Shown here piece by piece: positions 11,214 through 64,000 of a stretch of DNA of 64,000 nucleotides; positions within the stretch are counted from its first letter, which is position 1, and each line of letters starts with the position of its first letter. This DNA is from Perkinsus chesapeaki ATCC PRA-425 (taxonomy: Eukaryota > Protista > Perkinsozoa): the NCBI GenBank assembly GCA_013115145.1, contig JAAPAO010000126.1, positions 3,918 to 67,917 of the forward strand. Reading direction: 5' to 3'. Position numbers and translations under genes: made by a program. The notes beneath the pieces are model-generated. The model was not told the origin of the DNA. It ran no database searches and worked only from the letters and a program-made list of their open reading frames with translations.

Positions 11214-13266
11214 CTATCGACGCTCCCGACCAGTCCATCTCCCCGATGTCGATGGTTGACCAAAACCCCTTCCTGGTGCTGCAGGATTATACACCTATAA
11301 GAGGCAGTGCAGCGGTATCCGTATCTTCAGTGAGCCCTACTGTATAGGTACCACTAACCCTCTCTGGTTTAACACCATACGGCCATCTCTTACTTATCTG
11401 CTGCTTTACCTAATAAACTAATACTCAACGAACATTAAGGTATCTCCAACGTGCAGCACACGTATGGAGTAACAACGACGACAGCTTGGAAACTTGCTGC
11501 CGAGATATGCTACGAGACGTCTAGTAGTCCAGCATGCTCTTTGTTTGAGCCTCTTTATTGTAAGATTTAAACTGATAACCCTATAGTGGAGTGTTGAGAT
11601 AAGGCTCTATGTAACCCTATCTATAACTGATAACCCTATAGTGGAGTATTGAGATAAGGCTCTATGTCTATCCTATCTATAACTGATAACCCTATAGTGG
11701 AGTATTGAGATAAGGCTCTATGTCTATCCTATCTATAACTGATAACCCTATAGTGGAGTATNNNNNNNNNNNNNNNNNNNNNNNNNNNNNNNNNNNNNNN
11801 NNNNNNNNNNNNNNNNNNNNNNNNNNNNNNNNNNNNNNNNNNNNNNNNNNNNNNNNNTAGTATTGAGATAAGGCTCTATGTCTATCCTATCTATAACTGA
11901 TAACCCTATAGTGGAGTATTGAGATAAGGCTTTATGGCTATCCTATCTATAACTGATAACCCTATAGTGGAGTATTGAGATAAGGCTTTATGGCTATCCT
12001 ATCTATATTATCATTCCTATATAACACTTCCAACAGAGCACCCCACAATATTACCGCCACAGGCTTCCCAAAATTAGCAGGTGGAGGCTTAACAAGATGC
12101 CGGGTGTACCTATACTGTCATCCACCAAGCATGAGAGGATGACAGGAGCATCTCACCGAACAAGTTTGCCAGTCTGAGGATGCTTAACATTCCTTGGTCT
12201 ATATCTATGACGCCATAACCTTTGCTGCAGCATCCACTTAACTTTATCACCATCAACAGCAATAGCATTAACCGTCTGAACAATAAGCGTATCGATCCCA
12301 TCCCAACGTAGCCAGCCCTTTCCCACCTTAGAGGGGTCCTTAAGCGCCATATAATTGAATCTAATAAGCCTGAGGCCAAGCTGCTTGACCACCCATTTGT
12401 AAAGCTCAAAGTCTTTGATGAATAAAGCCTTCATTACCCGATTCCCTGTACTAGGTTCCCATACCTCCTCGGTGCACTGTCAGCTTACTTCGACAAAGTG
12501 CCATCTTTATAGCCTGCTTAGCTCTTGTATTTCTTTCCTGCAATATATTAGTTGCTCGCATATTAAGTATCCTCTCTGTTAATCTATCAACACTCTCTTC
12601 AACCTCCTATTATACCCCTCATTACATGGCTATTTTAACAGGCAAGCTCCCAGTGTCAAACGCAGACCTCTGGAACTTCTGCAGCAGCTGGTATCGTCGG
12701 AACCTAACCCCACAGCACTCCCCCACCACCACCATCTGCCCTACTTCGAGACTTGCTTCTCCGAGGCGCATGCCAACGACAGTGTCTGCCGTAACTCCGC
12801 TGGTGCTGCACTCAAATCATCTCCACTTAGGTTGTACCTATCAAGCCTCTCCTTTGATGTACCCCTTCCACCCTACACAAAGCCGGCCGGCCTTTGAGCT
12901 CTCATCAACAGGAATTCCTTCTCAGCCGACATCTACGCATTGCAAGCTCTACGGCCGAGACAATCCTCCTCCTACTTGGAAAAGCGTCTTTATTGGTGCG
13001 CATTTCTGTGCCCTATTTCCCGTGAAGCGGTGATACTCTAGCTTTGGCAGCTGGTATTTGTAGGGCATCGGCCCTTGATTAGGCGGCAGCTTCACTTTAA
13101 GGTATGGGTTCTTGGGGAAAAGATTCTTTTTCTTCAACTTCACCTTGGCGAACCCTCGCCTTTGCTGACCGCCAACGATCCACCCAGCTGAAGAGATAGA
13201 ACTACTACTAGCACAGATAGCCGATTGAAGGAGTAAGGGCAGTCCACCGACGCTCCGAGGAATCAT
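11214..13266 (-). CDS. MRPS15: Mitochondrial ribosomal protein uS15m with long extensions, multi-exon
   Basis: Presequence-like N-terminus; uS15 motifs FDTGSLPVKIA and KDFELYKWVVKQLGLR; 3' exons (WPYGVKPERVSGTYTVYNPAAPG..) below 11530 are tentative. Confidence 0.75.
11571..12007. repeat. Tandem repeat, unit about 56 bp, spanning an assembly gap; probably intronic in uS15m
   Basis: Unit actgataaccctatagtggagtattgagataaggctctatgtctatcctatctata, about 3.4 copies before and 2.7 after the N-run. Confidence 0.95.
11762..11857. other. Assembly gap (N-run)
   Basis: Run of N inside the tandem repeat. Confidence 1.
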
Positions 13267-24241: not shown

Positions 24242-26893
24242 TTATCTTCCACACAGAGCCATCTCCTAACATCCATCATACCAGCACCGCCCCCACCAAA
24301 CCCTAATACCTCTTCTGTCTGCACCGTCCCCTTCGGTAGAAAGTCATATAGTTCCGCACCGTACTCGGCCAGGAGCCTCTTGCGCTCTTCAGCAATGACC
24401 TGCAAGGGAATACAATTAACAACCAGTTGGAGCCAACTCAGATGAGCACCTTCTCCCGAACCTCATCAAACTTGAGCAGCTCCTCGTACTCCTTCCGCTC
24501 CTTCTCCCTCTCCGCATCAAACTGCCTCTTCCTCTCTTCGACCAACCTACCATCACAATCTACCGTCACTGCGCCACAGAATTCCCATACCGGTCAACCT
24601 CTCGCTTGTGCTCCAACACCTTCATCCTTCTCCGCTGGGCATTCATCTGCTCAATCTTAGCATCCTAAGCCATCACCATCCCGCCAGCCACATCCCTTCT
24701 CTCCTACATTAGCGAACTTAGCCATCAACTGCTCCCTAAAGCGGGCCTCCTGCGCCTCCTCTTCCTGCCTTCTTTTCTAAACTTGCAAATCCCTCTGTAA
24801 CCCAATCCCCACAACTTCACCTCTTTCATCTCCATTTGATACTCATAAGCTGCCAACATGTCCTCTCGGTCCTTCGCCCTCTTAGCAGCTTCAGCCTAAT
24901 AACCACCACAGCAAAGACTAAAAGCAGCACTTAGCCACCAATACATAACAACTCTAAGAAATGGAATACAAAGCAAATATGAAATCCACAGATCCAGTTT
25001 GCTTCTCTAGGAGATGTTAACAAGCATCCACCAATGATGCTCAGCTGCCGCCAGTGATCCCCTCTTACCTTCTCTCTTTCCCTGCTCTTCTTTTCCAATT
25101 CCTCCCAAAATAACTCATTCCTATAGTACTCCAATTCAGCATCTTTAGATGCCTTTGCCGCTTGTTCGGCTACACCACCAAATCCCCCAACTCCCCCCTA
25201 CAAGAGCAGCATCAGCAACCCTACCCATCATCTTATCCAATATCCGCTTCTTCTCCTTCTCCTTAGCTGCCTTCTCGGCATCCAACCTACCAACGCCGCC
25301 GCTCCTACCCCACAGCCTGACCTCTACTCCTACCGCTCTTCCATCTCCCTCTTAGCTCTCGCATAGGCCTCAATCCTTGCCTCTTCCTCCCTGTCAGCCG
25401 CCTGCTGCTGCCGTCGCATCCTACCATCCAGCGTGACTCTCGTCCCCAGCCGCCATCAGCAATCACCTCGCTGCCTCCTCGGCGAACTCCTTCAGCTGTT
25501 TCTGCGTATCTAGCTGTTGCTGCCTCCTCCTTTCCATAGCGTCCATCTCCTCCTGATTAAACAAAGGAGTGGTAGACAGTAACTTCTTCAGCTCTAGTAG
25601 CCCGATATCAGTAAGATGCTATTGTGCACCCCTAACGAAATGCGCTCTTGCCGAATTTGCCGAACTTAGAGTCACCGATACTATTACATTTCACTTCAAG
25701 AGCCCTTTACATTTCGCCATACATAGCTTAACGTTATATACTATATCTAAGCTATCATATATGATATTATATAAAATGCTTTTATAGAAATTATCCCACC
25801 ACATTAACAGACTTGATTATTACGAATTGAGTAACAAGTCCATAAATATTGTATCCACGTAATATCAGTACAAACACCCCAGTGATGCTAACCAAAGTCT
25901 TACCTTCTGAATCCGCCTCACTACAGCGTCCACCTGAGCCTTCTCTCTAAGATGCTCCTTCAATGCCTTTGACACCAACGACACTGTTTGTTGAACAAAG
26001 GAAAATGCGTTACAATTTCACGCTGGAGTTCCTTTTCTTCGATCTGCTTCTGCTGCAGGTTCTTGGCATACTCTCTCTTCTCTTGCTACAAAAATACCCA
26101 ATAATCCTAGCGGAGCGATGCACATACCATGCCTACCACAGTGTACTCCTTCAGCTGCTCCTTCTCCAAATCTCTCAAACGTTCTGATTCAGCCATTACC
26201 TCCTGCTCTCCGCGACATCCCTACCGATTTCCAGCTGGGTCTCCAACTGTTCCTCCAATCGACGTTGCTCCTGCGCCCTATACTCCATATCCAACAACTG
26301 TGCTGCCCTCTCCCTATTGACCTACCCTTCCCTTATAAGCAATAACACCCCCTATTCCCATCCCCCCACCTTAGCCAGCTCTATCCTTGCCCTCAATTGC
26401 TTCAGTTCATCGCTTTCCTCGCATATCCTCCTTCTAAGCTGATCCTCCCTAACAGCCCTGGCCTGTCTTGCCTCCAGCTCTGCAGCTGCTGCCTCCTCCA
26501 TAGCCATTATCTACACCCCTCCTCCTCATCATCAACAACCACAGTGTAGTTAATACCGTCTTCTTAGTCTCCTTATGAGTGGTCTCTGCTAAATATTCAG
26601 CATCAGCTGTTCTCTCCCTTGCTATCTCATCCTGCCTGAGCGACACCACTAGCTTACCCCACATGACAGCTCCTTACTCTCTTTTCCATCGCTTCAACTC
26701 CACTCTCTTATCGCTCTTACTATGCCCACCTACGACACAATAAAGGAGACAGCAGCAGCAGCAGCAGCAGCTGCGCAATAACCTTACCAAGTATAAGCTG
26801 ATCCTTGAGCATCTTTCCCAAAGATTCATTCCTAGCTTCAACCTCCCGAAACTTCGCCAACTCCCTCTCTCTATACCGTCTTAGCTGTGCCAT
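24242..26893 (-). CDS. MNS1: Meiosis-specific nuclear structural protein 1 / axonemal microtubule inner protein (TPH domain), multi-exon
   Basis: Coiled coil with RICEESDELKQLRARI, FREQLMAKFA..IEQMNAQRRRMKVLEHKRE and IAEERKRLLAEYGAELYDFLPKG; start approximate. Confidence 0.8.
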
Positions 26894-29441: not shown

Positions 29442-31392
29442 ATCAAACATAGCAATTCCACATTATCTTTCTCCTGTATGCGTCAACTGAAAGGTGCGCA
29501 CACGTGGATTTAGAGAACCGCTTTGAAAGAAGCGATGAAGCGGCATAATGGCAGGCAGGAAAGAGCTCAACGAGTTTGCCCAACCCATCCGAAACTTGTC
29601 ATTATGCGCTTAGTGAACGCATGTGCACGAACACACGCGTACGGAGACAGAGTCTATCCTTTTTTACAGGACACTTGCATCTTCCTTTCCAGAGCACCAG
29701 GACCGTAAGCTATATAGGGAGGACAGGCTTTTATAAGAAGAAGATCAAGATTAAAAGAAGAAGCCTTCTTGAAGTTACACTGAGAGGAATAATGTGAGCT
29801 ATAGACTTTAGCCTATAGTCTTTCAGCTGCTTTCGATATCCCATGAACTGGCAGTACACACCACGGTGACATTCGCGACGCGATATGGGTCGACGCCGCA
29901 GCAGCAGATCTCCCACGCTTAACCTATTATATTATTGGCAATTACAACACAACAGAGATACATTAAGGATTTCATCATATTACTAGGAGACTTAAAGGGC
30001 AATGAAGTAGCATTGTCACGACCAGTAGAATAACATGGAAACAATGCTACCACCACCGTATAAGAAACCTTAACAACAACATCGTGATAACGTTACGAAA
30101 CAGGAAACTCTGAACATTCGTACAATGTTGAAACAGAGCACACGATGTTTGACCATATCATTGCATACATCAACATTGCCAACAACAACACTTAGAAACA
30201 CATCAATAAAGCGGTAAATACATAACCACTTGAATGAACCTTAGAGCACTTATATGGCTTGGATGTCGATAACATATTATTATTATCGGCTTCGAAAGCC
30301 ACATATCACACCACCGACGATAGTAGCAAAGGTCATTAAAGCAGAGTCGCATCAACGATTAACAGCGACAATAGCTTATAGCATTACAACAGACATGTAG
30401 TAGTACAGGAAGGCGGATAACATTCTAGAACATAATAGAACTAGACCTTTACAGTATATAATAACCCGTATCACAGTAGCAGGAGAAAATTAAAGCACAT
30501 TAATGGATGCCAACATAGAGAGCACTTTTACATCACTCCGCAATGGTACAGCCATTCTACAGTACAATACCCGCTATGTGAAGGGAAATACATGGCTGTT
30601 AAGAAAGCTTCGTTTATAAGAAGCGGAAAGGAAAATCACAAGTGAGCATTACTGCTCATAACCGTCTGCTATAATCGATAATCAAAATACAACGATACAG
30701 CGACAAGACTAACAACTGTTGCTGATGCCAACATCAGAACTGGCAAAGTTACACAGCCGATGACAACAGGTTTCGTTATCACCGAATTTGGCAGAACTTA
30801 GCCGCGCATGCGAAGGCAAGAACAACAGTAACCACGGAATTGGCCGCAACCAGATACCATAAGTTGTTTAGACAAATAGATGAAGCATAGAAATAAAGTG
30901 AACGATGAAAGGTATATCACAAGCTACTATCATTTACGTAGCCTTTATGGACAGCACATCACCAACAATGATATCACAACCTACAGCGAAGGGCAAATGC
31001 CGCAACACTGTAGCGGAGGCGATTTACATGAGGATGATGTTTCCGACAGCAACCATGGATAATGACAAGGAACGACTAAAGACCATATTGTATATAAGAC
31101 CATATACTCTTAATGAGTAGTAATTGTATGAATAGATAATAAGATAGTAAACTATTTCTTCTTGCTACAGCTTTTGTTATAGAATTACGATTACAAACTC
31201 ATTTGAGCACTCATAGGCGATGATGCCAATACGCTGTTACTATTGCAAGTGATAGTAGTACACAGCAATAACGATACGACATCCTCAAGAGGGTAAAAAG
31301 CATCGCAAAGCAGCATAGTACTCGCCTCCAGTGGTGGCGCACCGCAACAGAAACAGCAATATGTACACCGCTATAGTAGGAAAAACAACACC

Positions 31393-35491: not shown

Positions 35492-36849
35492 AGAAGGACG
35501 GGATTAGTAGATATAACACAATTAAAAGAGTAACACAACGTAGCGGAACTGATACAAAAACCGATAAAACAAATGAGCCAAGAAATTGGAGAGATTATAG
35601 CATTTTAGAACACATCATTTTTCTCAAGACGAAATACTGTGAATGGATAATGACAGGATTAATAATATACCTAGAACACAAGGCTTCAAGAACCGTGTAG
35701 TAATATTCATATTGACAATGTAAATGAGGCAATATAATAATAAGAATTGACAGAAAAATGGTATAACGATTGTTACGCATATTAACCTTACACTAAGCTA
35801 AAGCTAGCGACAGCCATATACATTGGAAGGCCCGAATTTAACTACACCTTGGGACCGCATATCATTATTGGGATGAGTGCGTAATAAAGATGACATATAT
35901 ACACCTATCTGACGGATGCCAAAGCGAGTCCTATGTCCCCCACCGATGAAGCAGGACCGTTCACCTTGGAAATATATCGATTACTTGGGCGAGCGCTAAT
36001 TTCTTGAAAGTTAGGCCTCATGTTCATCTTGGCCTCGAACAGGGCGGATTTGAGTTAGATTGTTTAGTGAATGGTCACCGAAGTGGCCCATGCTCCCATC
36101 GATGATGTGACAAGAAGATTAAGCGGTGAAAATGGGCTTCCGGAGAAAGAGTTAATACAAATGTAGTAGTGGGGAGACAGGATATTGGGGAGGTTATGGG
36201 TTAGGAGTCCGCATACCATATCATCCGAGTTGAACCTGGATGAATCTAAATCTGACAATTACTCTGAAACGGACAAGCTTGGCGCTGGTAGGGTGTATTG
36301 GTATATGACAGTAATGTTATTCCTCCTATAGGGATAGTATGTGTTGAGTCATTAGCAGCTACCTTCCGTATAATGGAGAGAAGGAGGTTATTAAGGGTAG
36401 TATGAGGGGATACTACCTGCACGGTAGACTGCATATAGTCGAACTCTTCAAGCTGGCTTGAAAATGCCCCCAGTTAAAATATAGTTCCGCGTGGGGAATG
36501 TGTGAATACCAAATACCAGCTATAGTCTCCTAGGGGCAGTTTAATAAGCACCACGCATCTTTACACTAACACTTTGTATAAAACGTATAATCTAGGCAGC
36601 AAAGCTCCGCACAGAAGTACGAAAATCTCGAGGAGGCCTTTATGTTGGTATCATGCGCGCCGCATATTCTGAGCCAGAGAACTTTTATGCGTCTCGGGTC
36701 TATAATTTCTCTCCAACGCATGTGGCTGCTCTAGAAAGTGCTCTTCAAGTCTGATCCTTCCATTGCGTAGGTTCTTCACCGTCCGATCCGCGCTAGATCT
36801 GTTAGCCAGGGTATCCTACAGGCTGTATTAATATTCTGTCTCTTCATTG

Positions 36850-39679
36850 TGTTATGTCAGCAGTTAGGCCTCAACATAAGCTCCTCGGGGGTTACAAATG
36901 TAATACCAGCCTTCCCATTAAGGGTTCCTTATGCTTACTTAGCGTTGGGCTGTCCCCCTATGGGCACCTGTTGTGGTGACATGTCTGGTAGTAGTAGCAG
37001 CTTTGATGAGTGTAACACAATCTCAGCAGTTTGTTATACCTACCTTAATGCTTACTACACTGTAATAACCCTCCTATTAGCCTTACCATAATAGATCCAG
37101 GTACCTGGGCATGATGTGGTTGGCTTGGGTTTACGATCCTGACTCTGACAGGACACTCTTCTTCCTGCTCAGACCTACTAAGGTAGTCTCCTCTCGCCGC
37201 CTCCAGGCTGTCATTTTGCCATCCAGAGCGAAAGGCTTGTTCTAATACTAGTGATGTGCATTGAGCTGGGCCTGTTCCTGGCGTATTGTCTGCTCCATTG
37301 GCTATACCCTTTGTTGATTGATAGTATATCCGAGACATGGCTAGCGAAACACTGGTAGTAGCACTGCAGGTGGTGTTGGGACGAAATATGTCTTCGATTA
37401 GGTTTAGACTGCAGTATGAGGGTGATGGATGGTTCAGATACGTCCCTTATGGTATCTTTACACCACGTACCTGGAGGAGATGTCGGTATACTGGCTCAAC
37501 TGATAGGGAGGTAGTACAGGGTAATAGAGGATATGTACAAAGGGGAATGATGATAACTGTGCTACTCGGTTTCCTGGGACCAGTCTGGTTGGTTAGCTTT
37601 TCTCTGTTGAAAACTATGTTTTTTGGCCGAAAAATAGAGTAGAATACCTTTCTCAATATCATCATGGACTTCTTTCAAGCGGGGAGATGAAACCAAATAA
37701 TAAATTACTCAAATTGTAGCTATTGTCGGAGATAGGCTTGATTCGTGGACAAGGCGATGAGTGGGAGATAGGCTTGATTAGTGGACAAGGCGATGAGTGG
37801 GAGATAGGCTTGATTAGGGTCGCCCCCACGGCACCGGCGAGTGGCGTGATGACTCCTTCCACGGTGAGTGTTTGATGGGGAGGTTTTGCCATGGTGAGCC
37901 TGTGGGTCCATTCCGTGCCCGTGAGTTCGGCTCTGGATCACTATCAGTTCAAACATTTATAATGTAATATAAGGGTAGAGGAGGATAAGGTAGTCTTACT
38001 AAGTGTAGGTATGCTACTAGTAGGGCGGAGGAGGATATACGGGAGACACATTTCACACCTAGCCGGTCGATAGATGGTATGAGGTTTGGTGTAGTTGGAG
38101 TAGAGTGTTGCTCTGGTGGGGACTTCTATGCCCATCTACCGCAGGTAGTAACGTCTGGAAGTGATCCTTGGGGTGCATTTAACTACCGTTATTGAGCGAC
38201 AATAGTGAGAAGCGGGTTACCTTTCGTTGGGAACTGTTTGGGGTTGTTTTGGTGATGTACCGAGTCAGCACTACTGAGGAGCTACTTCGGGGAATGCTAG
38301 GAAATACATCAAAGTCTCTCTGCTTCCTCGTGTCAGCCGTGGCACTTCGGCCATGGCTTTAGAAGACAATACACAATTTAGAGATCTATGAATTATTAAA
38401 TGTTGCTTATTTTCTATTCAATAAGTTTATTATTATTAGTAACTTCATTATTAATGCATTACTATGCATCTGCCTGTAAAGTATCAATTCGGTATGAGGG
38501 AAACATATAACATCATTTCCCGGACTGCTTGTTGCCTTACCCCACCATGCGCTGTGATGTACATGGTGTTTAGGTTACTGATAGAGTAGGAGAGGAGACT
38601 AGAGATGTCTGCACGGCATTACGGACACTTAAGAGGAGCTTGACCAGTACAGATTCCGAAACCACCACCTTCAGTAGGTCTGAATCATTACTAACGTTAC
38701 TATAATTATAGGTGCATCATCACCGTCCCGTGGAGGGGGTAATACCCTTACGAGCCGTCTTGAGGATGAAGATAGGCGTGTCACCGCCCATCTCTGGCCT
38801 AATCGGGGTTTAGAGATCCATGGTGGTTACGAGTGCAATGCCCGAGTTAAAGTGGTGGGCCGCTCCGTTTTCTTATTGGAGCCGATACCTATGACCACAC
38901 CGTCCAGTGAGGCGTTGGTCTTTTTGCATGGCTACAATTGTCCGACCGAGTATGCCCTATTGCGGCTAGGACAGATGCTGGCTTTGGGTAGCTTTCCCGC
39001 TCATATCCATCCCTTTGTGTTTTCCCAAGCCACTGGGCAGACCTTCTCCTATATAAAGGCAAAGGAGTGTATTGGCCAGTTCGCTGGGGACCTTTTGGAT
39101 TTCCTATTGGACCTTCGAAGGCGAGGTTATCATCACGTCCACTGTCTGGTGCACAGTATGGCAGCACACCTGTTCTTCATGATGCTGGAGGAGTATGAGA
39201 ATCGTCGCTTGCTCGACCCGGAGTCCACCGAGATACTAAAGTTGGCCAACGTAGTCCTTATTAATGCAGATTTCCCCCTTACTAGTTTTGAAGAAGTGCA
39301 TGTCCCTCGGGTATTGGAGGTAGCAGACAGACTTACGATGTACTGTGATGACCGAGACTTCGCTCTGCTGTGCTCGGAGGTGTGCCTGCGCGATAAAGTT
39401 GTCGGGCGGAAGATTTGGCCGGTTTGCGCCCGGCCCAGCGGGTCTCTTCCGTACGGTAGGAGCCGGATAGACGTTATGGACTGCCGGCACATGCAGCAGA
39501 ACGTTCACTCTATTCGGCACAATTATTTCAATTTAAACGTACAAATTGTCAGTGATATAGCGGAGCTGGTGACAGACCATTGTGGGGCGGATCAACGGTT
39601 GACGAGAACGGTGCGGCAGGTGGCTGGGGAGAATGTCTTCAGTTTCCTCTGTCCGCCAAAGTATGTTAAAAATGAGTAG
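36850..39679 (+). CDS. TM segments, MORN-like motif and C-terminal DUF900-like alpha/beta hydrolase; multi-exon, 5' end uncertain (may extend to about 35900)
   Basis: TM exon (LVLILVMCIELGLFLAYCLLHWLYPLL); GRPHGTGEWRDDSFHGECLMGRFCHGEPVGPFRARE; last exon LVFLHGYN..VHCLVHSMA..NVVLINAD..RHNYF. Confidence 0.7.
37728..37817. repeat. 36-bp tandem repeat, 2.5 copies, intronic
   Basis: ggagataggcttgatt(c/a)gtggacaaggcgatgagtg repeated directly before the GRPHG exon. Confidence 0.9.
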
Positions 39680-53420: not shown

Positions 53421-56400
53421 TTAAGATGAAGACATCCCTCGGTGGAAGTGTGGCTGACTGTCAACTTCTTTCTGGGTCGGCATTCGCTCGTTTTCAAGGT
53501 CCATCGATCGGGCCTCGGCAAATTTCTGCAGTTCATTCTTCAAAGCATCACGACCAGATAATAATAAACCCGGTGCTAACCTGGTAATATAAATATAATT
53601 AATATCAATAAATATATTATAACCTATGTCCTGGGCATACACCTTTAAGATTGATAATAGTCTCATTCTCTTCTCTAAGGGTTTTAAACATAAGCATCAT
53701 TCTACTTACCTAAATTAATAATATTAATAACATCATATATACTGTTACAGTCTGTATCTTCTTCCTCATACGGTCTGCCTTCTCCTTAGATATAGCCTTT
53801 CCACTAGCTTCAGCTTCTCTACCTAAACCATATCAGCTCCACCCCTCTCCTACCAGTCAGCACCAGCAGCACCAATCCTCCAACTACTACCTCTACCATT
53901 AGTACTACTTTTCTCAATAGCTTTGGCCCCCTCGGCCATCATATGTTGATGAAGGCGTGCTGCTAGCGACACGGATTTATTCTGACAACAACGGCACAAG
54001 ATTCCACAGCCCGATTACGTACACCCGAGATCCACCAGTAGCTTATTCCAGTCCGACTGCCCGAGCCAAACCGCAGGGCAATCTTTAATGCTCATACCAA
54101 ACGAGATGACTACGTTCCCTGTACTGTGCCCTACACAGTACTGGTTTACCATACAGTAGAAAATGTAAAACCGTACCACTGGATACTATAAATTCCGTCT
54201 GGGCTTCCGGTCTCTGTGTAGTTTCCACTATCAGTTAAGTTGCACTAGTACTACTACTACCACGACGACCGGTACAACTCTATGATGCCTCATAAGCCCT
54301 ATAACCTTATTACTTGCTCCTCCGACAAGCTTGCCAATCGCGCAAGTTTGAGCTGTTGGAGATCGGCCTGTGGCAGTTGAGGGAGTTCCGCGTCAGCTAC
54401 ATCGGGAGCACGAGCGTACTGAGTAAGGAACAGCGTGAGTGTTCATGGAAAGTATTGAATAGCTACATCTCCTGACTCGTTCTGAGGATTGAGGATGTAG
54501 AATAACATCTCAGTTATCTTTTCCGCTACAAATGGCATAGACCAGGCAAATACATCCATAAAGTTAGGTAGATGATATCTATTTAATAATAATCATTAAT
54601 TATAATAATAATATCACTTACGGATGCTTAGTGAAGTTGAATTGTAATATGTTCAAAGTATTATTTTCAAACTTCAATACCGCTCCCTAAAATAATATTA
54701 TATTTTATATTTATAATATATATTACCTTATTATTATAAACATCACAATAATTAGGTGCTGAGAATATAGTAATAACAGATGGGAATCCTGTTGCCTCAT
54801 TCGTTCCTGAATAGAGGTCACTACAGTAAAGCGATTAACACTAGTCAAAGCTTTCCTCAGTAAAATCACAGTTCAGACGAGGGTGTCTCACTGACGAGGA
54901 GACCACCGTGCTCTTTCGATAAGGCCACTCTCTGGGCGCTGCTACTGATCTGGTCGATTATATAGTCATTTCGGCACAGACTTTCCGGAGACCGACGCCA
55001 AGAGACCTAGTCTATATTAAACCACTTTGGTTCATGTTTACCATAAGTAACTCATCACCTTGGATGCGCAAGTTGAGCTCTAAAATATCTTTATCCCGCC
55101 TCCCCTATTATTACTATGCATTTTATATCCCTCCAACTGTGCCTCATGTGCTCTAATAACTGACAATAATCTGACCAGCGAATCCCCATCCACTTTACAC
55201 TCCACAAATCGTACGAATTTTTCCCTAAGAACTTCGTCGCGGCCTCATAAGTGTAAAAGAAGCTGCAACCACGGACCTACCAACAGCGGAATGATATCAC
55301 TGCCGCCAGCACTACTACGTCATTTGGAACGAAGGATTTCTCCTTGGACCTAAATGCTACTGGGCCTTCCTTCTCCTCCTCTGGATCGCTCCACAATATA
55401 TCACTAGGGTAATTAGTAAGGGAGAGACAAGGCTTTATGAAATAGTACCAAAAAAGACCTTGTCGAGGAGGCTCTTGAAATCGGTTAATATTGTTGAAGT
55501 CATTAAGGGTATTCAAATCAGGTGACAAACCGCCGTGGATACAGAGGAATTTCCCTGAAGGGTCAACGATAAAAGGCTGAGAGGAGTAAGGCGCTACCGT
55601 TGACAACAGCAGCAAGCGGCAGACTATCGAAGGACTCCATAAACAACTCGTAGACAGTTAGGTTGTACTTGTATCTGCAAATCGATCAGATGGCACGCCT
55701 ATCAACCTTGTGAGAATCTTTAGACGCACCAATGACGGATATAAGATTCACAGACTTAGGAAGTCGAGTCTCAACCGCTGGTTACCCTTTTACTCGCATT
55801 CATCCCGAAAGTTGAAAAATGCAGTCATTTGGCGACATTCATGATTCCCACGTAATAATGTTATCGTTTTAGGATAATTAATCTTTAATGCGTACCTATT
55901 ATAATATTAAATAATAATATATATAATTATTACAATAATAATAACACTTCAACACTAAAACTACCTCTATCAACATAATCACCAAGGAAGAGATATCTAA
56001 TCAACAACAAATTAATGATGATGAGTTAATAATAATACCGTACTGTGTTGTAGATGGATCACCTCCAACATCCAACAACTTCATTAAATCATAATATCTA
56101 ATAATAATATTATTTATTAATTTATTAATTATTATTACTGTCCATGTATATCCCCAACAACTGTTATTGGATCTTTAAGTTTAACCATATTAGGTTCGGC
56201 TGCACAAAGCTCAGAACACCATTTAACTATTCTATTAATTGATTCAATATACAATCTTCCTTCACCAAACTAATAATAATATAAATAATATATTATTATA
56301 TATATAACTTACTAAATGCTTTTTCAAACATCGCCAATCTGGTGGGGATGTCTCACCACCTGGGAATAGTAACTCTGGTGACAGGGGCTGACAACGAACC

Positions 56401-56499
56401 TCATCTCCTTCCGCGCATACATATCGTTATTACTGCTCTCGGTGGTGGACTAACACTTCTTATCGGTCGATCGTGGAGAGGATCCTTCAATGGTTCCAT
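53421..56499 (-). CDS. CNA: Calcineurin catalytic subunit A (PP2B), tandem copy B, apparently intact
   Basis: [12 protein letters not shown]; GDIHGQ, GDYVDRG, LRGNHE, HGGLSP, SAPNYC; CaM-binding RKKIQT..; autoinhibitory DLENERMP. Confidence 0.93.
55780..56389. repeat. Near-identical AT-rich block shared with 59076-59685 (exons plus introns of calcineurin A)
   Basis: About 610 bp with only a handful of substitutions or indels; similar pairs at 53514-53789/56826-57101 and 54500-54798/57462-57760. Confidence 0.95.
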
Positions 56500-56708
56500 T
56501 CTACTCTCGAAAATAGTACCCAAACTACAGATAACATCTTTTCCCCTTTCCGATGAGCCTCCAAGTCCCCCTGACTTGACAAAATCCCAAACCTTAAGGG
56601 GAATAGTATTCTTTATAACACGACATTTGCTGTATATTAATAATGGATCATCATGGACTACACAATAGCAGAAATCACACATGGTGATGGTGGTGCGAAT
56701 AAAGTGTA

Positions 56709-59700
56709 CTAGGGCGATAGGGTCGGTGAGGCAGGGGACGATCCACCATGCTGGTGAAAGTGAGGTTGACTATTCACTTGTTCTTGGGTCGGCATTCGCT
56801 CGTTTTCGAGGTCCAGATTCTTGACCTCGGCAAATTTCTGCAGTTCATTCTTCAAAGCATCACGACCAGATAATAATAAACCAGGTGCTAACCTGGTAAT
56901 ATAAATATAATTAATATCAATAAATATATTATAACCTATGTCCTGGGCATACACCTTTAAGATTGATAATAGTCTCATTCTCTTCTCTAAGGGTTTTAAA
57001 CATAAGCATCATTCTACTTACCTAAATTAATAATATTAATAATATCATATATATCATTACAGTCTGTATCTTCTTCCTCATACGGTCTGCCTTCTCCTTA
57101 GTCGATTCCTTCACCGGTGACTCAGCCTCCCGACCTGCCTCATACTACCAAATATACCCCATAAACTAGCATTACCTTCCTCAACAACCTTAGCAGCTTC
57201 CGCCATCATATGCTGGTGTAACCGCGCCGCCAATGACACCGATGCATTCTGAGGTTCTCTCCATTCCCAACAGAGACCCAACCCACAACTACCTGCTCCT
57301 CAGAAAGACTTGCAGATCTCGCCAAGTTGAGCTGCTTCACATCAGCCTGTGGCAAATCGGGCAGTTCTAGCTCGGATACCTCAGTGTCTTGGGAGCCCTG
57401 CTGGAACCGTGCAACGGTAGAGGAAAAACAAGGCCACTACAGCCTGTGGCTTCAGTAGATGGAATAACATCTCAGTTATCTTTTCTGCTACAAATGGCAT
57501 AGACCAGGCAAACACATCCATAAAGTTAGGTAGATGATATCTATTTAATAATAATTATTAATTATAATAATAATATCACTTACGGATGCTTAGTGAAGTT
57601 GAATTGTAATATGTTTAAAGTATTATTCTCAAACTTCAATACCGCACCCTAAAATAATATTATATTTTATATTAATAATATATATTACCTTATTATTATA
57701 AACATCACAATAATTAGGTGCCGAGAATATAGTAATAACAGATGGGAACCCTGTTGCCTCTATCTTTTCTAAATACAAGTAATACACTAACTACATCCAC
57801 ATGTGCTTCCCAAATACATGCTATCTGCCACTCGAGAAAGCCATCTTTCGCCCAACCACTACGGAAAATATCCACTTAGATTCTAGAAGCTACAAATGGC
57901 GACGAGACTCTCGTGAAATGCGCGAAGATTTTTCATTTCTTATCAACAGAAGGAGGCATCCACAGGCGTGGCCCAAATAACCACTGATAAATCACTTCAC
58001 TTGGTTAACCACTTTGCAATCGTGTATCGTTTATATGTAGGCTAATAGGATTATATTATTGAACAAGAGATCTAGCCATCACTTGGCTAGCAAGTAAAGT
58101 GCGGCTCGAACCGTTTGCCGTCTTGGACCGAGTCGTAGCGTGAAGTCGACATGTGAACTAGAGTCTATATTTCCTCAACGAGTTAATATAGATTGTAAGT
58201 AGCTCCTTCCAAAGTAAGCCACCGAGTTGCCCAAAGTCAATGATGATCGAGAGCTCCCTACTGACCCCCCTTTATTATTACTATGCATTTTATATCCCTC
58301 CAACTGTGCCTCATGTGCTCTAATAACTGACAGTAATCTGATCAGCAAATCCTGTAAATAGTGAAGGGACAACTAAGGAGTAGCTACGAGTTCTTCCCTA
58401 GGAATTTACTAGTGCCGTCAAAGGTGAAGAAGTAGCTACATCCACGCACCTAGCATCAGTAGCACAGTAACCAAGGCTAAACCCATTGAGCTACGTCGTT
58501 GTGGACGAATGGTACTTCGTGCCCTTTCGATGATGCTCCCTCGACTTGCTCCTTCTCAGGGTCACTCCATAGAATGTCACTAGTAACACTATAACGGTAG
58601 TAAAACCAAGTGTTCTAGTACCAAACGATTCCCTGTCGAGGAGGCTCTTGGAATCTATTTATATTATTGAAGTCACCTAGACCACTGAGCTCCGGGGATA
58701 GGCCTCCGTGAACACACAAGAATTTGCCTGGAAAATACCTGTATCCTGTATCGGTGGCGTCTTACACTACCGTTAACAACAGCAGCAAGGGGCAGGTTGT
58801 CGAAGGACCCCATAAACAACTCGTAGACACTCATATTGTGCTTGTACCTGGTCAGAGAAGCATCCAATCCGAGGTTCCTCAAAAATGGCATCTCCGTAAT
58901 GAGAAGGTGCAATAGGAAGTTTAATAGGAAATCGGAATCTCCTGCGAACAGTTGACGTTCCTCTATGACCCCCTGTACGTAGTGGCTTGGGTGATCGATA
59001 CAAACAACGTTATTGATGGTCCATTGCGAAGACCGCGAGATCTATCCCACATCGGCCGACCGGACATCAGCCGCAGGTTACCCTTTTACTCGCATTCATC
59101 CCGAAAGTTGAAGTATGCAGTCATTTGGCGACATTCATGATTCCCACGTAATAATGTTATCGTTTTAGGATAATTAATCTTCAATGCGTACCTATTATAA
59201 TATTAAATAATAATATATATAATTATTACAATAATAATAACACTTCAACACTAAAACTACCTCTATCAACATAATCACCAAGGAAGAGATATCTAATCAA
59301 CAACAAATTAATGATGATGAGTTAATAATAATACCGTACTGTGTTGTAGATGGATCACCTCCAACATCCAACAACTTCATTAAATCATAATATCTAATAA
59401 TAATATTATTTATTAATATATTATTTATTATTACTGTCCATGTATATCCCCAACAACTGTTATTGGATCTTTAAGTTTAACCATATTAGGTTCGGCTGCA
59501 CAAAGCTCAGAACACCATTTAACTATTCTATTAATTGATTCAATATACAATCTTCCCTCACCAAACTAATAATAATATAAATAATATAATATTATATATA
59601 TAACTTACTAAATGCTTTTTCAAACATCGCCAATCTGGTGGGGATGTCTCACCATCCGGGAATAGTAACTTCGGTGACAGGGGCTAACATTGATCGAATG

Positions 59701-59796
59701 AGTGCCGGGAGCAGACCTTGTCATTATTACTGCCCCAGGAGGTGCACTGACTGATGCAACTGGCCGATCGCTTAAAGGGTCCTTTAAGGGTTCCAT
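56709..59796 (-). CDS. CNA: Calcineurin catalytic subunit A (PP2B), tandem copy A, apparently intact
   Basis: [12 protein letters not shown]; same catalytic, CaM-binding and autoinhibitory motifs and same intron positions as copy B. Confidence 0.93.
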
Positions 59797-60734: not shown

Positions 60735-61877
60735 ATGGCAGCATTACTACGCACTATTGGGGCAGCTGTAGCGGCTTTGGCTGCTATATTTTTCGGCGTG
60801 TGCTTTACCTTCGACATGGAGGCATCTCGTGGGTATTTGCCTATCCTGTGGAGAGCGGTGTTGAATAGTTGTCGCTCCTGCAACCGAGCTCATGTAGAGG
60901 ATTACACCCAATATGATATCCCATCTAATCTATCTGATAAGGTTATTCTTATTACAGGAGCATCAAGTGGTATTGGTTATCAATCTGCTAAGTTATTATC
61001 ATCTCGTGGTGCTAAAGTTATATTGGGTATCAGAGGTACAAGACAAAGATTAGATAATATAACACAATCTATACCTGGTCAAGTATTAGCTCCAGCACCT
61101 TTGAATCTGAGTGACTACAGCAGTATAAGGGATTTCGTCAAAGCCTTACCCACGGCCGATATCAACCATCTCGATATCCTCATCCTGAATGCCGGCAAGA
61201 GGGCCATGACATTCACTACTAACTCAGATGGCGTTGAATGGATGCTCGCCGCACACCATCTTGGTCATGCCTATCTTTTCGAGCTTCTAACACCTTTGGC
61301 ATTGCGCGCTCCTGGAGAAGTCCGCGTCGTCCTGACTGCGAGTGTTGCACATATGTGGCCTTATCCCGAGGGAGTTCGCTATAAGGACACTGAGGAAGGC
61401 TTCAAGTCAAACAACGCTTATGGGACCAGTAAGCTGGCGAATATCTTGTATGGCCGCGAACTGGCCAAGCGTATGGAGAAGGCACATCCTCACAAATTTG
61501 TGGTCGCCTCTGCTAACCCAGGAGCGGTCCATACCGAATTCTCCGACATGGTTCGTAATTTCCCCAACTGGGTGGCATACAACGCCAGTGTGGGGGCGAT
61601 GCCGGTCCTCAGGGCAGCAGTCGATGCAAATGTCACCACAGATGGGTGAGTTTAACTGCGCTGCATTTTCTTCAGGTCGGCCTATATTGGTGGTAGGTAC
61701 TATGTCCCAGTGGGACTGCGAGCCGACTGGAGACGCGATACTGCATACTGGTGGACTTGTAACGAAACACTGCGAGCTGAGTTATGGGAATGGACGCAGA
61801 AGATTCTTTTGAGAACTCACCAAACCGTTGGGGGTGCCGTCCCCGTGAAAGGCTCGCTCATGCTAAGCGACGTGTGA
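60735..61877 (+). CDS. Short-chain dehydrogenase/reductase (retinol dehydrogenase/WWOX-like) with N-terminal anchor, copy 1, 2 exons
   Basis: [28 protein letters not shown] (YxxxK), ANPGAVHT. Confidence 0.92.
60929..61103 (+). repeat. 175-bp AT-rich coding block shared by three SDR paralogs (also 62508-62682 and 63870-64000)
   Basis: Identical except two C/T differences in copy 2. Confidence 0.97.
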
Positions 61878-62316: not shown

Positions 62317-63466
62317 ATGTCATCCCTCCGCACCATTATAACGTCGCTTCCAGCTATTCTCGGTACCAGTTGGAAGTACCTCTCGGCTCTATTTGGGTAC
62401 GATATTCTCCACGGAGGACTTTTCCTTCTCCGTCAAATGCTCACAACATTTCCCTGCCTTAATTTCTGGCACTATAACGACTACGCCGAGCGGAGGCTCC
62501 CCAGAGATCTATCTGATAAGGTTATTCTTATTACAGGAGCATCAAGCGGTATTGGTTATCAATCCGCTAAGTTATTATCATCTCGTGGTGCTAAAGTTAT
62601 ATTGGGTATCAGAGGTACAAGACAAAGATTAGATAATATAACACAATCTATACCTGGTCAAGTATTAGCTCCAGCACCTTTGGAGCTATCAGATTTCGAT
62701 AGCGTTCGTGAATTCGCCGAGTCCCTCCCCAAAGCTGGTATTGATCATTTGGATATCGTTCTGCTTAATGCTGGTGGAATGGTCGAAGAGTATCGTACCA
62801 ACAAGGAAGGTATCGAATCCATGCTGGCTGGTCATCATCTTGGTCATGCGTATCTCCTCGACCTTCTCATGCCCCTGCTACTACGAAGCTCGTGGAAAGT
62901 TAGAGTTGTAGTCACCAGCAGCCTTGCCCACATTTTCTCATTTCCGGAAGGTGTCCGATATCACATAACGAAAGCCGACTTCTCACCATTTGTCGGATAC
63001 TCTAACAGCAAGCTCGCCAACCTCCTTTATACCAGGGCTCTATCAGCTCATTTGGATATCTCCTATCCGGGCAAGTTTAAAGTCAATGCCGTACATCCCG
63101 GATTTGTTAGAGTTCCTTTAACGGAGAACATGGCCCCTCGTTTTCTAATGTATAACCCCTTAACTGCGGCGCTGACAGTTCTTAGACCAGCATTCGGCGA
63201 AGATGATGAGGAAGGCGACGGGTAGGTTGGATGGACTCTCTGACGGTATCTTCTGGTGGAACGCTCCCTCGGGAGATGGAAGTTAATTGAGTTAAGTCAG
63301 ATACTATCTACCAGTTGGATATCGTGGTGATTGGTATAAAGATTCGGCGTATTGGTGGACATGTAATGATACTATGATAAATGATTTATGGCAATGGACA
63401 AGAAATATTATTAAACAAGTTCATGATAATAGACAAGTACCTCAAGGTTCATTGATGCTGGATTAG
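62317..63466 (+). CDS. SDR paralog copy 2, 2 exons
   Basis: [28 protein letters not shown]; last exon YYLPVG..WWTCN..LWQWT. Confidence 0.92.
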
Positions 63467-63696: not shown

Positions 63697-64000
63697 ATGA
63701 GGTGCTGCGGGACTTTGTCATTGCTTATCATATCCATTGCTATTGCTTTCGCAGCGATTCTGGTGCCATGGAGACCTCTGCAATATCATTTTCGCCAACT
63801 CACTCACTCTTTTCCGATTTTGAATATCTGGCACTATAACGATTACACTGAATATGATATCCCATCTAATCTATCTGATAAGGTTATTCTTATTACAGGA
63901 GCATCAAGTGGTATTGGTTATCAATCTGCTAAGTTATTATCATCTCGTGGTGCTAAAGTTATATTGGGTATCAGAGGTACAAGACAAAGATTAGATAATA
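63697..64000 (+). CDS. SDR paralog copy 3, truncated by window end
   Basis: [55 protein letters not shown]. Confidence 0.88.

What the first reader, a model, noticed from the sequence alone, without database searches (positions are those of the whole stretch)
53421..59796. Calcineurin A tandem copies: homogenised blocks are AT-rich, diverged blocks have normal GC
Seen: three blocks (about 280, 300 and 610 bp) plus a short one are nearly identical between copies, including introns made almost only of A/T. The intervening exons and introns are strongly diverged and about 45-50% GC. In a shared exon (FGEGRL..DIHG) 7 of 43 codons end in G/C, versus 17 of 25 in a diverged exon (YKHNMS..VVN, copy A). 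Both frames stay intact. Established: fungal RIP and methylation-driven deamination make duplicated DNA AT-rich, while ordinary gene conversion is usually GC-biased. Inference: a homology-sensing C-to-T process (RIP/MIP-like, or AT-biased conversion) acts on repeated segments, filtered by purifying selection. I know of no such system described in alveolates.
Basis: partly seen in the sequence, partly recalled or inferred. Interest (0 to 1): 0.8.

Follow-up and report, generated by a model that had tools for sequence, protein, structure and literature searches.

The report
AT-driven gene-conversion tracts in calcineurin pair
Two neighbouring calcineurin genes of a Perkinsus shellfish parasite keep three to four stretches nearly identical by copying from each other, and only in this species have those stretches turned almost wholly to A/T at every free position, the reverse of the usual GC pull of gene conversion.

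Summary
Two tandem calcineurin A genes on the minus strand (59796-56712 and 56499-53421) share four blocks that are 93-99% identical. These blocks are about 28% GC, against about 47% elsewhere. Five of their eight introns have 0-1 G/C outside the splice signals.

Orthologous loci from P. olseni and a third Perkinsus species show three things:
- The duplication is older than the species.
- The same blocks are homogenised independently in P. olseni, which is concerted evolution.
- The strong AT shift occurs only in the window's species. GC3 in blocks versus outside is 0.27 vs 0.51 here, 0.57-0.60 vs 0.53-0.64 in P. olseni, and 0.57 vs 0.58 in the third species.

A second family in the window, the SDR trio, repeats the pattern.

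The RIP/MIP reading is not supported. G:C-to-T:A transversions outnumber transitions at four-fold sites, RIP indices are normal, and the copies stay near-identical and open.

Best reading: recurrent inter-paralog gene conversion coupled to a strong G/C-to-A/T drive. That drive could be AT-biased mismatch repair or mutagenic repair synthesis; the data do not decide between them.

The parts
56712..59796 (-). Calcineurin A (PP2B catalytic subunit) copy A, about 19 exons
   Evidence: Exon cores were located by translation, and every intron has a GT-AG solution. The motifs GDIHG, GDYVDRG and RGNHE are present. The exon at 57539-57453 matches the calcineurin B-binding helix of human PPP3CA residues 341-369 (E=4e-10).
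53421..56499 (-). Calcineurin A copy B. It is the ortholog of the P. olseni downstream copy and of locus L001.
   Evidence: Exon mapping is and synteny with L001 and L003. Outside the blocks it groups with OB and XB (0.91-0.92 identity at codon positions 1+2, against 0.82 to copy A). Intron 11 has only a GC-AG solution.
59085..59690 (-). Block 1 in copy A (exons 2 in part to 6, introns 2-5). Its twin in copy B is 55789-56394.
   Evidence: 606 aligned nt with 13 mismatches. Core GC is 0.28. Introns 2, 3 and 5 have no G/C outside the splice signals. Exon GC3 is 0.15-0.36, against 0.35-0.58 in P. olseni.
57450..57780 (-). Block 2 in copy A (exons 12-14, introns 12-13).
   Evidence: About 96% identity. 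Introns are 5-9% GC, against 44-66% in the relatives. GC3 is 0.13-0.45, against 0.57-0.77.
56790..57101 (-). Block 3 in copy A (exons 17, 18 and the start of 19; introns 17-18). Its twin in copy B is 53478-53789.
   Evidence: 98% over 277 nt. Introns are 12-17% GC, against 43-54% in the relatives. Exon 18 GC3 is 0.31, against 0.73-0.77. Exon 17, at the block edge, keeps GC3 0.69.
58266..58352 (-). Short block in copy A (3' end of intron 10 plus exon 11). Its twin in copy B is 55099-55185.
   Evidence: 93% over 87 nt. GC3 is 0.27-0.32, against 0.42-0.50 in the relatives.
60915..61094 (+). Homogenised, AT-shifted tract of SDR paralog 1 (codons 61-120). Its twins are 62494-62673 and 63841-64000 (cut by the window end).
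   Evidence: 83-100% identity among the three window paralogs, against 35-76% outside the tract. GC3 is 0.00-0.27. The same tract is homogenised in P. olseni and P. marinus but has GC3 0.20-0.67 there.

Best explanation
Two tandem calcineurin A genes arose by a duplication older than the split of the sampled Perkinsus species. They keep exchanging sequence by short-tract inter-paralog gene conversion in the same three to four segments. These segments are runs of short conserved exons and short introns, bounded by long, indel-rich introns and by diverged exons.

In the window's species, conversion is coupled to a strong drive from G/C to A/T. Earlier scan notes call this species P. chesapeaki; I only showed that it is a Perkinsus that is neither P. 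olseni nor P. marinus. New G/C-to-A/T changes in one copy tend to spread to the other, while the reverse changes do not persist. As a result every unconstrained site has gone to A/T: intron interiors, synonymous third positions, and synonymous first positions of Arg and Leu. Protein sequence and GT/AG splice signals are held by selection.

Shown: the conversion, its confinement to fixed blocks, the limitation of the strong AT shift to this species, and the non-RIP spectrum. Inferred: that conversion causes the shift, and how. I slightly favour AT-biased repair of heteroduplex mismatches. The alternative is G/C-to-A/T-prone repair synthesis or damage to single-stranded intermediates. The data do not separate these two.
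For: (1) Concerted evolution. In block exons WA-WB identity is 0.99-1.00 at codon positions 1+2 and 0.86-1.00 at position 3. OA-OB is 0.92-1.00 at positions 1+2 and 0.74-1.00 at position 3. Outside the blocks the genes group by copy type: WB-OB 0.92, WB-XB 0.91, WA-WB 0.82.

(2) The shift is limited to this species. GC3 in block versus non-block exons is 0.28/0.53 (WA) and 0.27/0.50 (WB), Fisher p about 1e-6. It is 0.57/0.53 (OA), 0.60/0.64 (OB) and 0.57/0.58 (XB), all non-significant. Block introns are 5-26% GC here and 38-66% in the relatives.

(3) Neutral sites are almost saturated: 13 G/C among 267 intron-core positions, and five of eight introns have 0-1.

(4) P. olseni converts the same blocks (98% and 94% identical) with only a 4-point GC drop. 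Homogenisation therefore does not require AT-rich DNA.

(5) The effect is graded. Block margins are 92-96% identical but 46-52% GC, and edge exon 17 keeps GC3 0.69. This fits an effect that accumulates with the number of conversions.

(6) Copy-specific differences inside the blocks, polarised by the relatives, are mostly G>A at silent sites (4-5 G/C-to-A/T against 1-2 the other way).

(7) At third positions where the relatives agree, G/C-to-A/T is 51/85 and A/T-to-G/C is 5/59 in blocks, against 20/51 and 6/21 outside.

(8) The SDR trio replicates the pattern independently.

(9) Contigs from two separate sequencing studies hold 91-92% of the sampled 31-mers of the region.
Against: The link between conversion and the shift is a correlation.

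The window's species is the earliest-branching of those sampled (OB-XB 0.95, against 0.91-0.92 to WB). Parsimony alone therefore cannot say whether it gained the AT state or the others lost it.

The contig comes from a scaffolded assembly with an N gap at 11762-11857. Paralog-specific SNPs inside the blocks could be mis-phased and identity mis-estimated.

No known repair pathway is documented to favour A/T this strongly in a nuclear genome.

Sample sizes for the substitution spectrum are small, about 35 four-fold sites.
Confidence: 0.7

Rival explanations
1. A RIP/MIP-like genome defence. A homology-sensing enzyme deaminates (methyl)cytosines in duplicated DNA, and selection removes damaging changes.
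For: AT-richness is confined to the segments that share homology. The few recent copy-specific changes are G>A transitions.
Against: Transversions are at least as frequent as transitions at four-fold sites (C>A 9, G>T 9, against C>T 6, G>A 2.5). RIP dinucleotide indices equal background. The copies are 96-99% identical instead of independently mutated. There are no nonsense mutations. Earlier notes report intact multi-copy retrotransposons in this genome (unchecked). No note in the scan mentions a DNMT, which is weak evidence.
Confidence: 0.06
2. Reverse causality. The segments were AT-rich first, for example as fragile or nucleosome-free DNA, and AT-rich DNA attracts breaks and hence conversion. 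Composition would be the cause of homogenisation, not its result.
For: AT-rich low-complexity DNA can be recombinogenic. Block limits are the same in different species.
Against: P. olseni converts the same blocks at normal GC. P. olseni and P. marinus homogenise the SDR tract at GC3 0.2-0.67. Block margins are converted but not AT-rich. This reading leaves the origin of all-A/T introns unexplained.
Confidence: 0.08
3. Ancestral state, later lost. The AT-rich blocks are old in Perkinsus and were eroded back to normal GC in the P. olseni, P. marinus and third-species clade. The drive would then be ancient rather than special to this species.
For: The window's species branches first among those sampled, so polarity is open. 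P. olseni and P. marinus tracts show a weak shift in the same direction.
Against: The AT segments match this species' own present tract limits. Block 1 starts in exon 2 here but in mid-exon 3 in P. olseni. Block 2 is 96% identical and AT-rich here, but 78% identical and GC-normal there. Copy-specific changes still run from G/C to A/T. This rival changes the timing, not the mechanism.
Confidence: 0.1
4. Assembly or polishing artefact: repeat collapse or copy-paste gap filling created blocks that are falsely identical.
For: The assembly is scaffolded and has an N gap. The repeats are 300-600 bp.
Against: The blocks differ at 1-4% of sites. Each copy needs these exons for an intact phosphatase. 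An artefact cannot create AT-richness. 91-92% of sampled 31-mers are present in contigs of two separate studies. The same kind of tract is seen in P. olseni and P. marinus assemblies.
Confidence: 0.03

Closest known systems
GC-biased gene conversion (gBGC) between paralogs; I recall mammalian histone and hsp70 genes as examples (own knowledge). The general account is cited in PMC10463633.
   Same: Recurrent conversion between duplicated genes changes base composition in the converted tracts only, at silent and intronic sites, independently of selection on the protein.
   Different: The polarity is reversed and the effect is far stronger. Tracts go to about 0-5% GC at free sites in a 47% GC genome, rather than being enriched in GC.
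AT-biased gene conversion reported for organelle genomes (angiosperm plastomes, yeast mitochondria; discussed in PMC4524490 and PMC7846184)
   Same: Conversion is associated with a bias towards A/T.
   Different: Those cases concern organelle DNA with its own repair systems. Here the tracts are nuclear, in spliced protein-coding genes with intact introns.
Repeat-induced point mutation (RIP) of Neurospora and other fungi
   Same: Duplicated DNA becomes AT-rich in a homology-dependent way.
   Different: RIP makes only C>T/G>A transitions with a CpA preference, makes copies diverge, and inactivates them. Here transversions are as common, dinucleotide indices are normal, the copies stay near-identical and the genes stay open.
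Mutagenesis associated with mitotic gene conversion and break-induced replication in yeast (own knowledge)
   Same: Repair synthesis and single-stranded intermediates raise the mutation rate inside conversion tracts. This could supply the G/C-to-A/T changes.
   Different: In yeast this is known as a rate effect in experiments. It is not known as a force that recodes natural genes to A/T over evolutionary time.

Membership tests
Calcineurin A (PP2B catalytic subunit, PPP family) | PPP metallophosphatase motifs GDxHG, GDxVDRG and GNHE | tested here: met
   GDIHG, GDYVDRG and RGNHE are present in exons 3, 5 and 6 of both copies. The P. olseni orthologs carry PF00149 Metallophos. Exon 3 matches fungal calcineurin A chains (E=1e-4).
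Calcineurin A (PP2B catalytic subunit, PPP family) | Calcineurin B-binding helix after the catalytic domain | tested here: met
   Exon 14 aligns over all 29 residues to human PPP3CA 341-369. All 24 hits are calcineurin A chains or fusions containing it.
Calcineurin A (PP2B catalytic subunit, PPP family) | Calmodulin-binding and autoinhibitory segments | not tested
   The C-terminal exons 15-19 are conserved among Perkinsus species, but they were not compared with characterised segments.
Concerted evolution by inter-paralog gene conversion | Paralogs within a species are more alike than orthologs between species inside the tract, and the reverse outside it | tested here: met
   Identity matrices by partition; the same holds for the SDR tract.
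Concerted evolution by inter-paralog gene conversion | Sharp-edged tracts that include non-coding DNA | tested here: met
   Introns inside blocks are 96-100% identical, while introns outside cannot be aligned.
GC-biased gene conversion | Converted tracts enriched in G/C relative to flanks and orthologs | tested here: not met
   Tracts are 28% GC against 47% in the flanks. GC3 is 0.27 against 0.57-0.60 in orthologs.
RIP / MIP-like homology-dependent cytosine mutation | Changes are C>T / G>A transitions only | tested here: not met
   Four-fold sites: C>A 9, C>T 6, G>T 9, G>A 2.5. Synonymous CGA>AGA changes also occur. Later A/T interchange could blur an old transition signal.
RIP / MIP-like homology-dependent cytosine mutation | CpA/TpG depletion and TpA excess (RIP indices) | tested here: not met
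   (CpA+TpG)/(ApC+GpT) is 1.08-1.29 and TpA/ApT is 0.87-1.04 in the blocks. The values for the rest of the window are 1.20 and 0.93.
RIP / MIP-like homology-dependent cytosine mutation | A RID/DNMT-type enzyme in the genome, and 5mC on the repeats | not testable with these tools
   The whole genome and methylation data are not at hand. No scan note mentions a DNMT.
AT-biased gene conversion (biased heteroduplex repair) | Excess of G/C-to-A/T over A/T-to-G/C change in converted tracts relative to unconverted DNA | tested here: met
   Third positions: 51/85 against 5/59 in blocks, and 20/51 against 6/21 outside. Polarity rests on agreement of the relatives, not on a true outgroup.
AT-biased gene conversion (biased heteroduplex repair) | Direct bias in the transmission or repair of G/C versus A/T mismatches | not testable with these tools
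   Needs tetrads or mitotic conversion assays, or allele-frequency spectra.

The most novel reading that the evidence does not exclude
This Perkinsus lineage has nuclear gene conversion of reversed polarity, meaning mismatch repair in heteroduplex that favours A/T. It is strong enough to drive free sites in recurrently converted tracts to about 0% GC. Sister species that convert the same tracts show little or no such bias. That would be a natural switch in the direction or strength of biased gene conversion between congeners.
Probability: 0.35. Interest if true: 0.85.

Novelty: new variant of a known kind. Interest (0 to 1): 0.7.

Why it matters
GC-biased gene conversion is treated as a near-universal force shaping eukaryotic base composition. 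Here the same process, concerted evolution of paralogs, goes with the opposite and far stronger outcome. Congeners that convert the very same tracts without it serve as built-in controls.

This makes two questions directly testable in culturable protists: which repair step sets the direction of conversion bias, and whether the effect is a fixation bias or a mutation bias.

It also has practical consequences. These tracts distort codon-usage, GC3 and phylogenetic analyses of Perkinsus genes. All-A/T 40-nt introns are likely to trip gene predictors.

Tried and rejected
There is therefore no read-depth, phasing or splicing evidence. After that I sent neither these letters nor their near-identical twin in copy A (about 57650-57690) to any search tool. 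They were used only in local scripts on the closed machine (composition, alignment, and local BLAST with the copy as subject), and I did not print them.
- No RNA run holds the region.
- A full-length calcineurin query could not be built by reference, because the exons are short. The word search with the 89-aa 3' ORF gave one hit, which led to locus L001.
- The P. marinus locus next to the SDR array has a sugar transporter instead of the calcineurin pair, so there is no P. marinus calcineurin comparison.
- Two further contigs of the third species (L004, L005) hold SDR genes but no calcineurin.
- I did not run the big representative search because the protein's identity was not in doubt.
- Foreign or third-copy donor for the AT blocks: rejected. 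Intron positions and protein sequence are those of the Perkinsus orthologs.
- Special intron size class: rejected. Short introns of 42-56 nt are normal in this gene outside the blocks too. Block introns are only somewhat shorter relative to P. olseni (mean ratio about 0.74 against 0.88).
- Using the lowered A/T-to-G/C rate in blocks to separate fixation bias from mutation bias: rejected, because saturation makes both models predict it.


Full report
WHAT IS THERE. The minus strand carries two tandem genes, copy A (59796-56712) and copy B (56499-53421), each with about 19 short exons. They encode calcineurin A, the PP2B catalytic subunit. The PPP motifs GDIHG, GDYVDRG and RGNHE are present. The exon at 57539-57453 aligns over its whole length to the calcineurin B-binding helix of human PPP3CA (341-369), and all 24 hits are calcineurin A chains or fusions containing it. 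Exon 3 matches fungal calcineurin A. The P. olseni orthologs carry PF00149.

CHECK OF THE OBSERVATION. The repeat finder and a global alignment give four near-identical blocks:
- 59690-59085 / 56394-55789
- 57780-57450 / 54818-54488
- 57101-56790 / 53789-53478
- a short one at 58352-58266 / 55185-55099

They are separated by exons that are 50-88% identical and by introns that cannot be aligned. Alignment windows at >=90% identity average 28.4% GC; those below 70% identity average 46.8% (p=1e-7, and only 1 of 68 circular shifts is as extreme). Block introns are 5-26% GC and all other introns 36-55%. Outside the first six and last three bases, five of the eight block introns contain 0-1 G/C, and in copy A the total is 13 of 267. 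In the whole 64-kb window, six of the 11 stretches below 32% GC are these blocks. The rest are a 56-nt tandem repeat and what look like ordinary intergenic stretches.

The statement 'both frames intact' holds for copy A, which has a GT-AG solution for every intron. Copy B intron 11 has no in-frame GT donor, and only a GC-AG solution exists. Its acceptor and the following residues (TNE) match the relatives, so copy B is probably functional, but there is no RNA evidence.

RELATIVES. The best protein matches of the neighbouring SDR gene are Perkinsus olseni (69%) and P. marinus (66%). The window is therefore a Perkinsus that is neither of these. Earlier notes of this scan call it P. chesapeaki; I did not verify the species name.

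Two orthologous loci were fetched:
- L003 (P. olseni) has the same order: SDR array, two Metallophos genes in tandem, inositol phosphatase.
- L001 is a contig of run SRR12548988 from a third Perkinsus species, about 70% identical in DNA to both of the others. It starts at exon 6 of a calcineurin gene and continues into the same downstream genes as the window.

Outside the blocks the genes group by copy. At codon positions 1+2, WB-OB is 0.92, WB-XB 0.91 and OB-XB 0.95, but WA-WB only 0.82 and OA-OB 0.75. Inside the blocks they group by species: WA-WB 0.99-1.00 and OA-OB 0.92-1.00. So the duplication predates the species, and each lineage has homogenised the same segments on its own. This is concerted evolution by gene conversion. 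In P. olseni block 1 is 98% identical over 454 nt and block 3 is 94% over 365 nt.

THE AT SHIFT IS CONFINED TO THE WINDOW'S SPECIES. GC3 of block versus non-block exons:
- Copy A: 0.28 vs 0.53. Copy B: 0.27 vs 0.50. Fisher p is about 1e-6 for each.
- P. olseni copy A: 0.57 vs 0.53. P. olseni copy B: 0.60 vs 0.64.
- Third species: 0.57 vs 0.58.

The orthologous introns of the relatives are 38-66% GC. The P. olseni pair shows only a 4-point GC drop in its identical windows. Homogenisation as such does not need or produce extreme AT-richness in the sister species.

One caution on polarity: the window's species branches first among those sampled, so parsimony cannot polarise the change. I favour a process that is active in this lineage, for three reasons. 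The AT segments follow this species' own tract limits: block 1 starts in exon 2 here but in mid-exon 3 in P. olseni, and block 2 is 96% identical and AT-rich here but 78% identical and GC-normal there. Differences between the two copies, polarised by the relatives, are mostly fresh G>A silent changes (4-5 against 1-2). And the block margins are already identical but still 46-52% GC, as expected if the shift builds up with the number of conversions.

A SECOND FAMILY IN THE SAME WINDOW. Three intronless SDR paralogs share a tract (60915-61094, 62494-62673, 63841-64000) that is 83-100% identical, with GC3 of 0.00-0.27. The rest of the genes is 35-76% identical with GC3 near 0.5. P. olseni (five paralogs) and P. 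marinus (three) homogenise the same tract but keep GC3 at 0.20-0.67. A P. olseni paralog that escaped homogenisation has GC3 0.73 in the first 30 codons of the tract, where its converted sisters have 0.20-0.40. There may therefore be a weak shift in the same direction across the genus and an extreme one here.

WHAT KIND OF PROCESS.
- At four-fold sites where the relatives agree on C or G, the window has C>A 9, C>T 6, G>T 9 and G>A 2.5. Arg CGA has become AGA.
- RIP indices do not differ from background.
- The copies are near-identical and open.

These points argue against cytosine deamination of the RIP/MIP type, although later A/T interchange could blur an old signal. At third positions, G/C-to-A/T is 51/85 and A/T-to-G/C is 5/59 in blocks, against 20/51 and 6/21 outside.

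Two mechanisms fit. One is AT-biased repair of mismatches in the heteroduplex formed between paralogs, which is a fixation bias. The other is repair synthesis or single-strand damage that mainly produces G/C-to-A/T errors, which are then spread by unbiased conversion; that is a mutation bias. With saturated sites both predict the same pattern, so I cannot separate them. I slightly favour the first because free sites reach essentially 0% G/C.

RIVALS. The rivals I scored are reverse causality (AT-rich DNA attracting conversion), an ancient state lost in the other species, and an assembly artefact. The first is contradicted by the GC-normal converted tracts of P. olseni and P. marinus. The second changes the timing, not the mechanism. 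Against the third: the blocks differ at 1-4% of sites, contigs of two separate studies hold 91-92% of the region's sampled 31-mers, and an artefact cannot create AT-richness.

WHAT IS KNOWN. Four literature searches found no description of this in Perkinsus, and no AT-biased conversion between nuclear paralogs. 'AT-biased gene conversion' appears for plastids and yeast mitochondria (PMC4524490, PMC7846184). A paper on AT-rich mammalian tandem arrays explains them by lack of GC-biased conversion, not by AT-biased conversion (PMC10463633).

This scan has itself noted the same pattern in other families of this genome: transporters, ACSL, IDH, a RING cassette and others. These are unchecked notes, but they agree with what I tested here. 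This report adds:
- the intron evidence (free sites at about 0% G/C);
- the orthologous tandem pair of P. olseni, which converts the same blocks without the shift;
- the substitution spectrum and RIP indices;
- the graded margins.

I worked beside them and sent neither them nor their twin in copy A to any search tool afterwards. There are no reads, no RNA, no population data and no whole-genome test. Four-fold site counts are small.

VERDICT.

Noticed in passing
window 58271-58260 and 55104-55090 (just after exon 11), compared with L003 and L001: In the two P. olseni copies the exon-11 donor reads A|GTA directly after the MHS codons. The third species has no GT at that position. Both window copies read AAT there, so the GT donor seen in P. 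olseni is missing. Copy A has a GT donor further downstream; copy B has only a GC-AG solution. The AT drive may have destroyed a splice site.
   Followed up: partly
window 11560-12063: A 56-nt tandem repeat, about 30% GC, interrupted by a 96-N scaffold gap (11762-11857). This shows that the contig comes from a scaffolded assembly.
   Followed up: partly
L001:1815-2311, against window 57060-57019: Intron 17 is 495 nt in the third Perkinsus species, about 71 nt in P. olseni and about 40 nt (all A/T) in the window. Relative to P. olseni, block introns of the window are shortened more (mean ratio about 0.74) than non-block short introns (about 0.88). This hints at a deletion bias in the tracts.
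   Followed up: partly
L002 (P. marinus GG671079.1, 563307-584525): Upstream of the P. marinus SDR array lies a sugar transporter instead of the calcineurin pair, so synteny is broken there. The P. marinus calcineurin locus was not found.
   Followed up: no
L001 position 1: The contig of the third species breaks exactly at the 3' end of block 1 (exon 6). That is what a near-identical repeat between its two copies would cause in a short-read assembly, so block 1 is probably homogenised there too.
   Followed up: no
window 25676-25900, 31051-31250, 35576-35800, 38351-38525: Four stretches of about 30% GC. They appear to lie between genes, contain no exon-like open frame, and are much less extreme than the calcineurin blocks.
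   Followed up: partly
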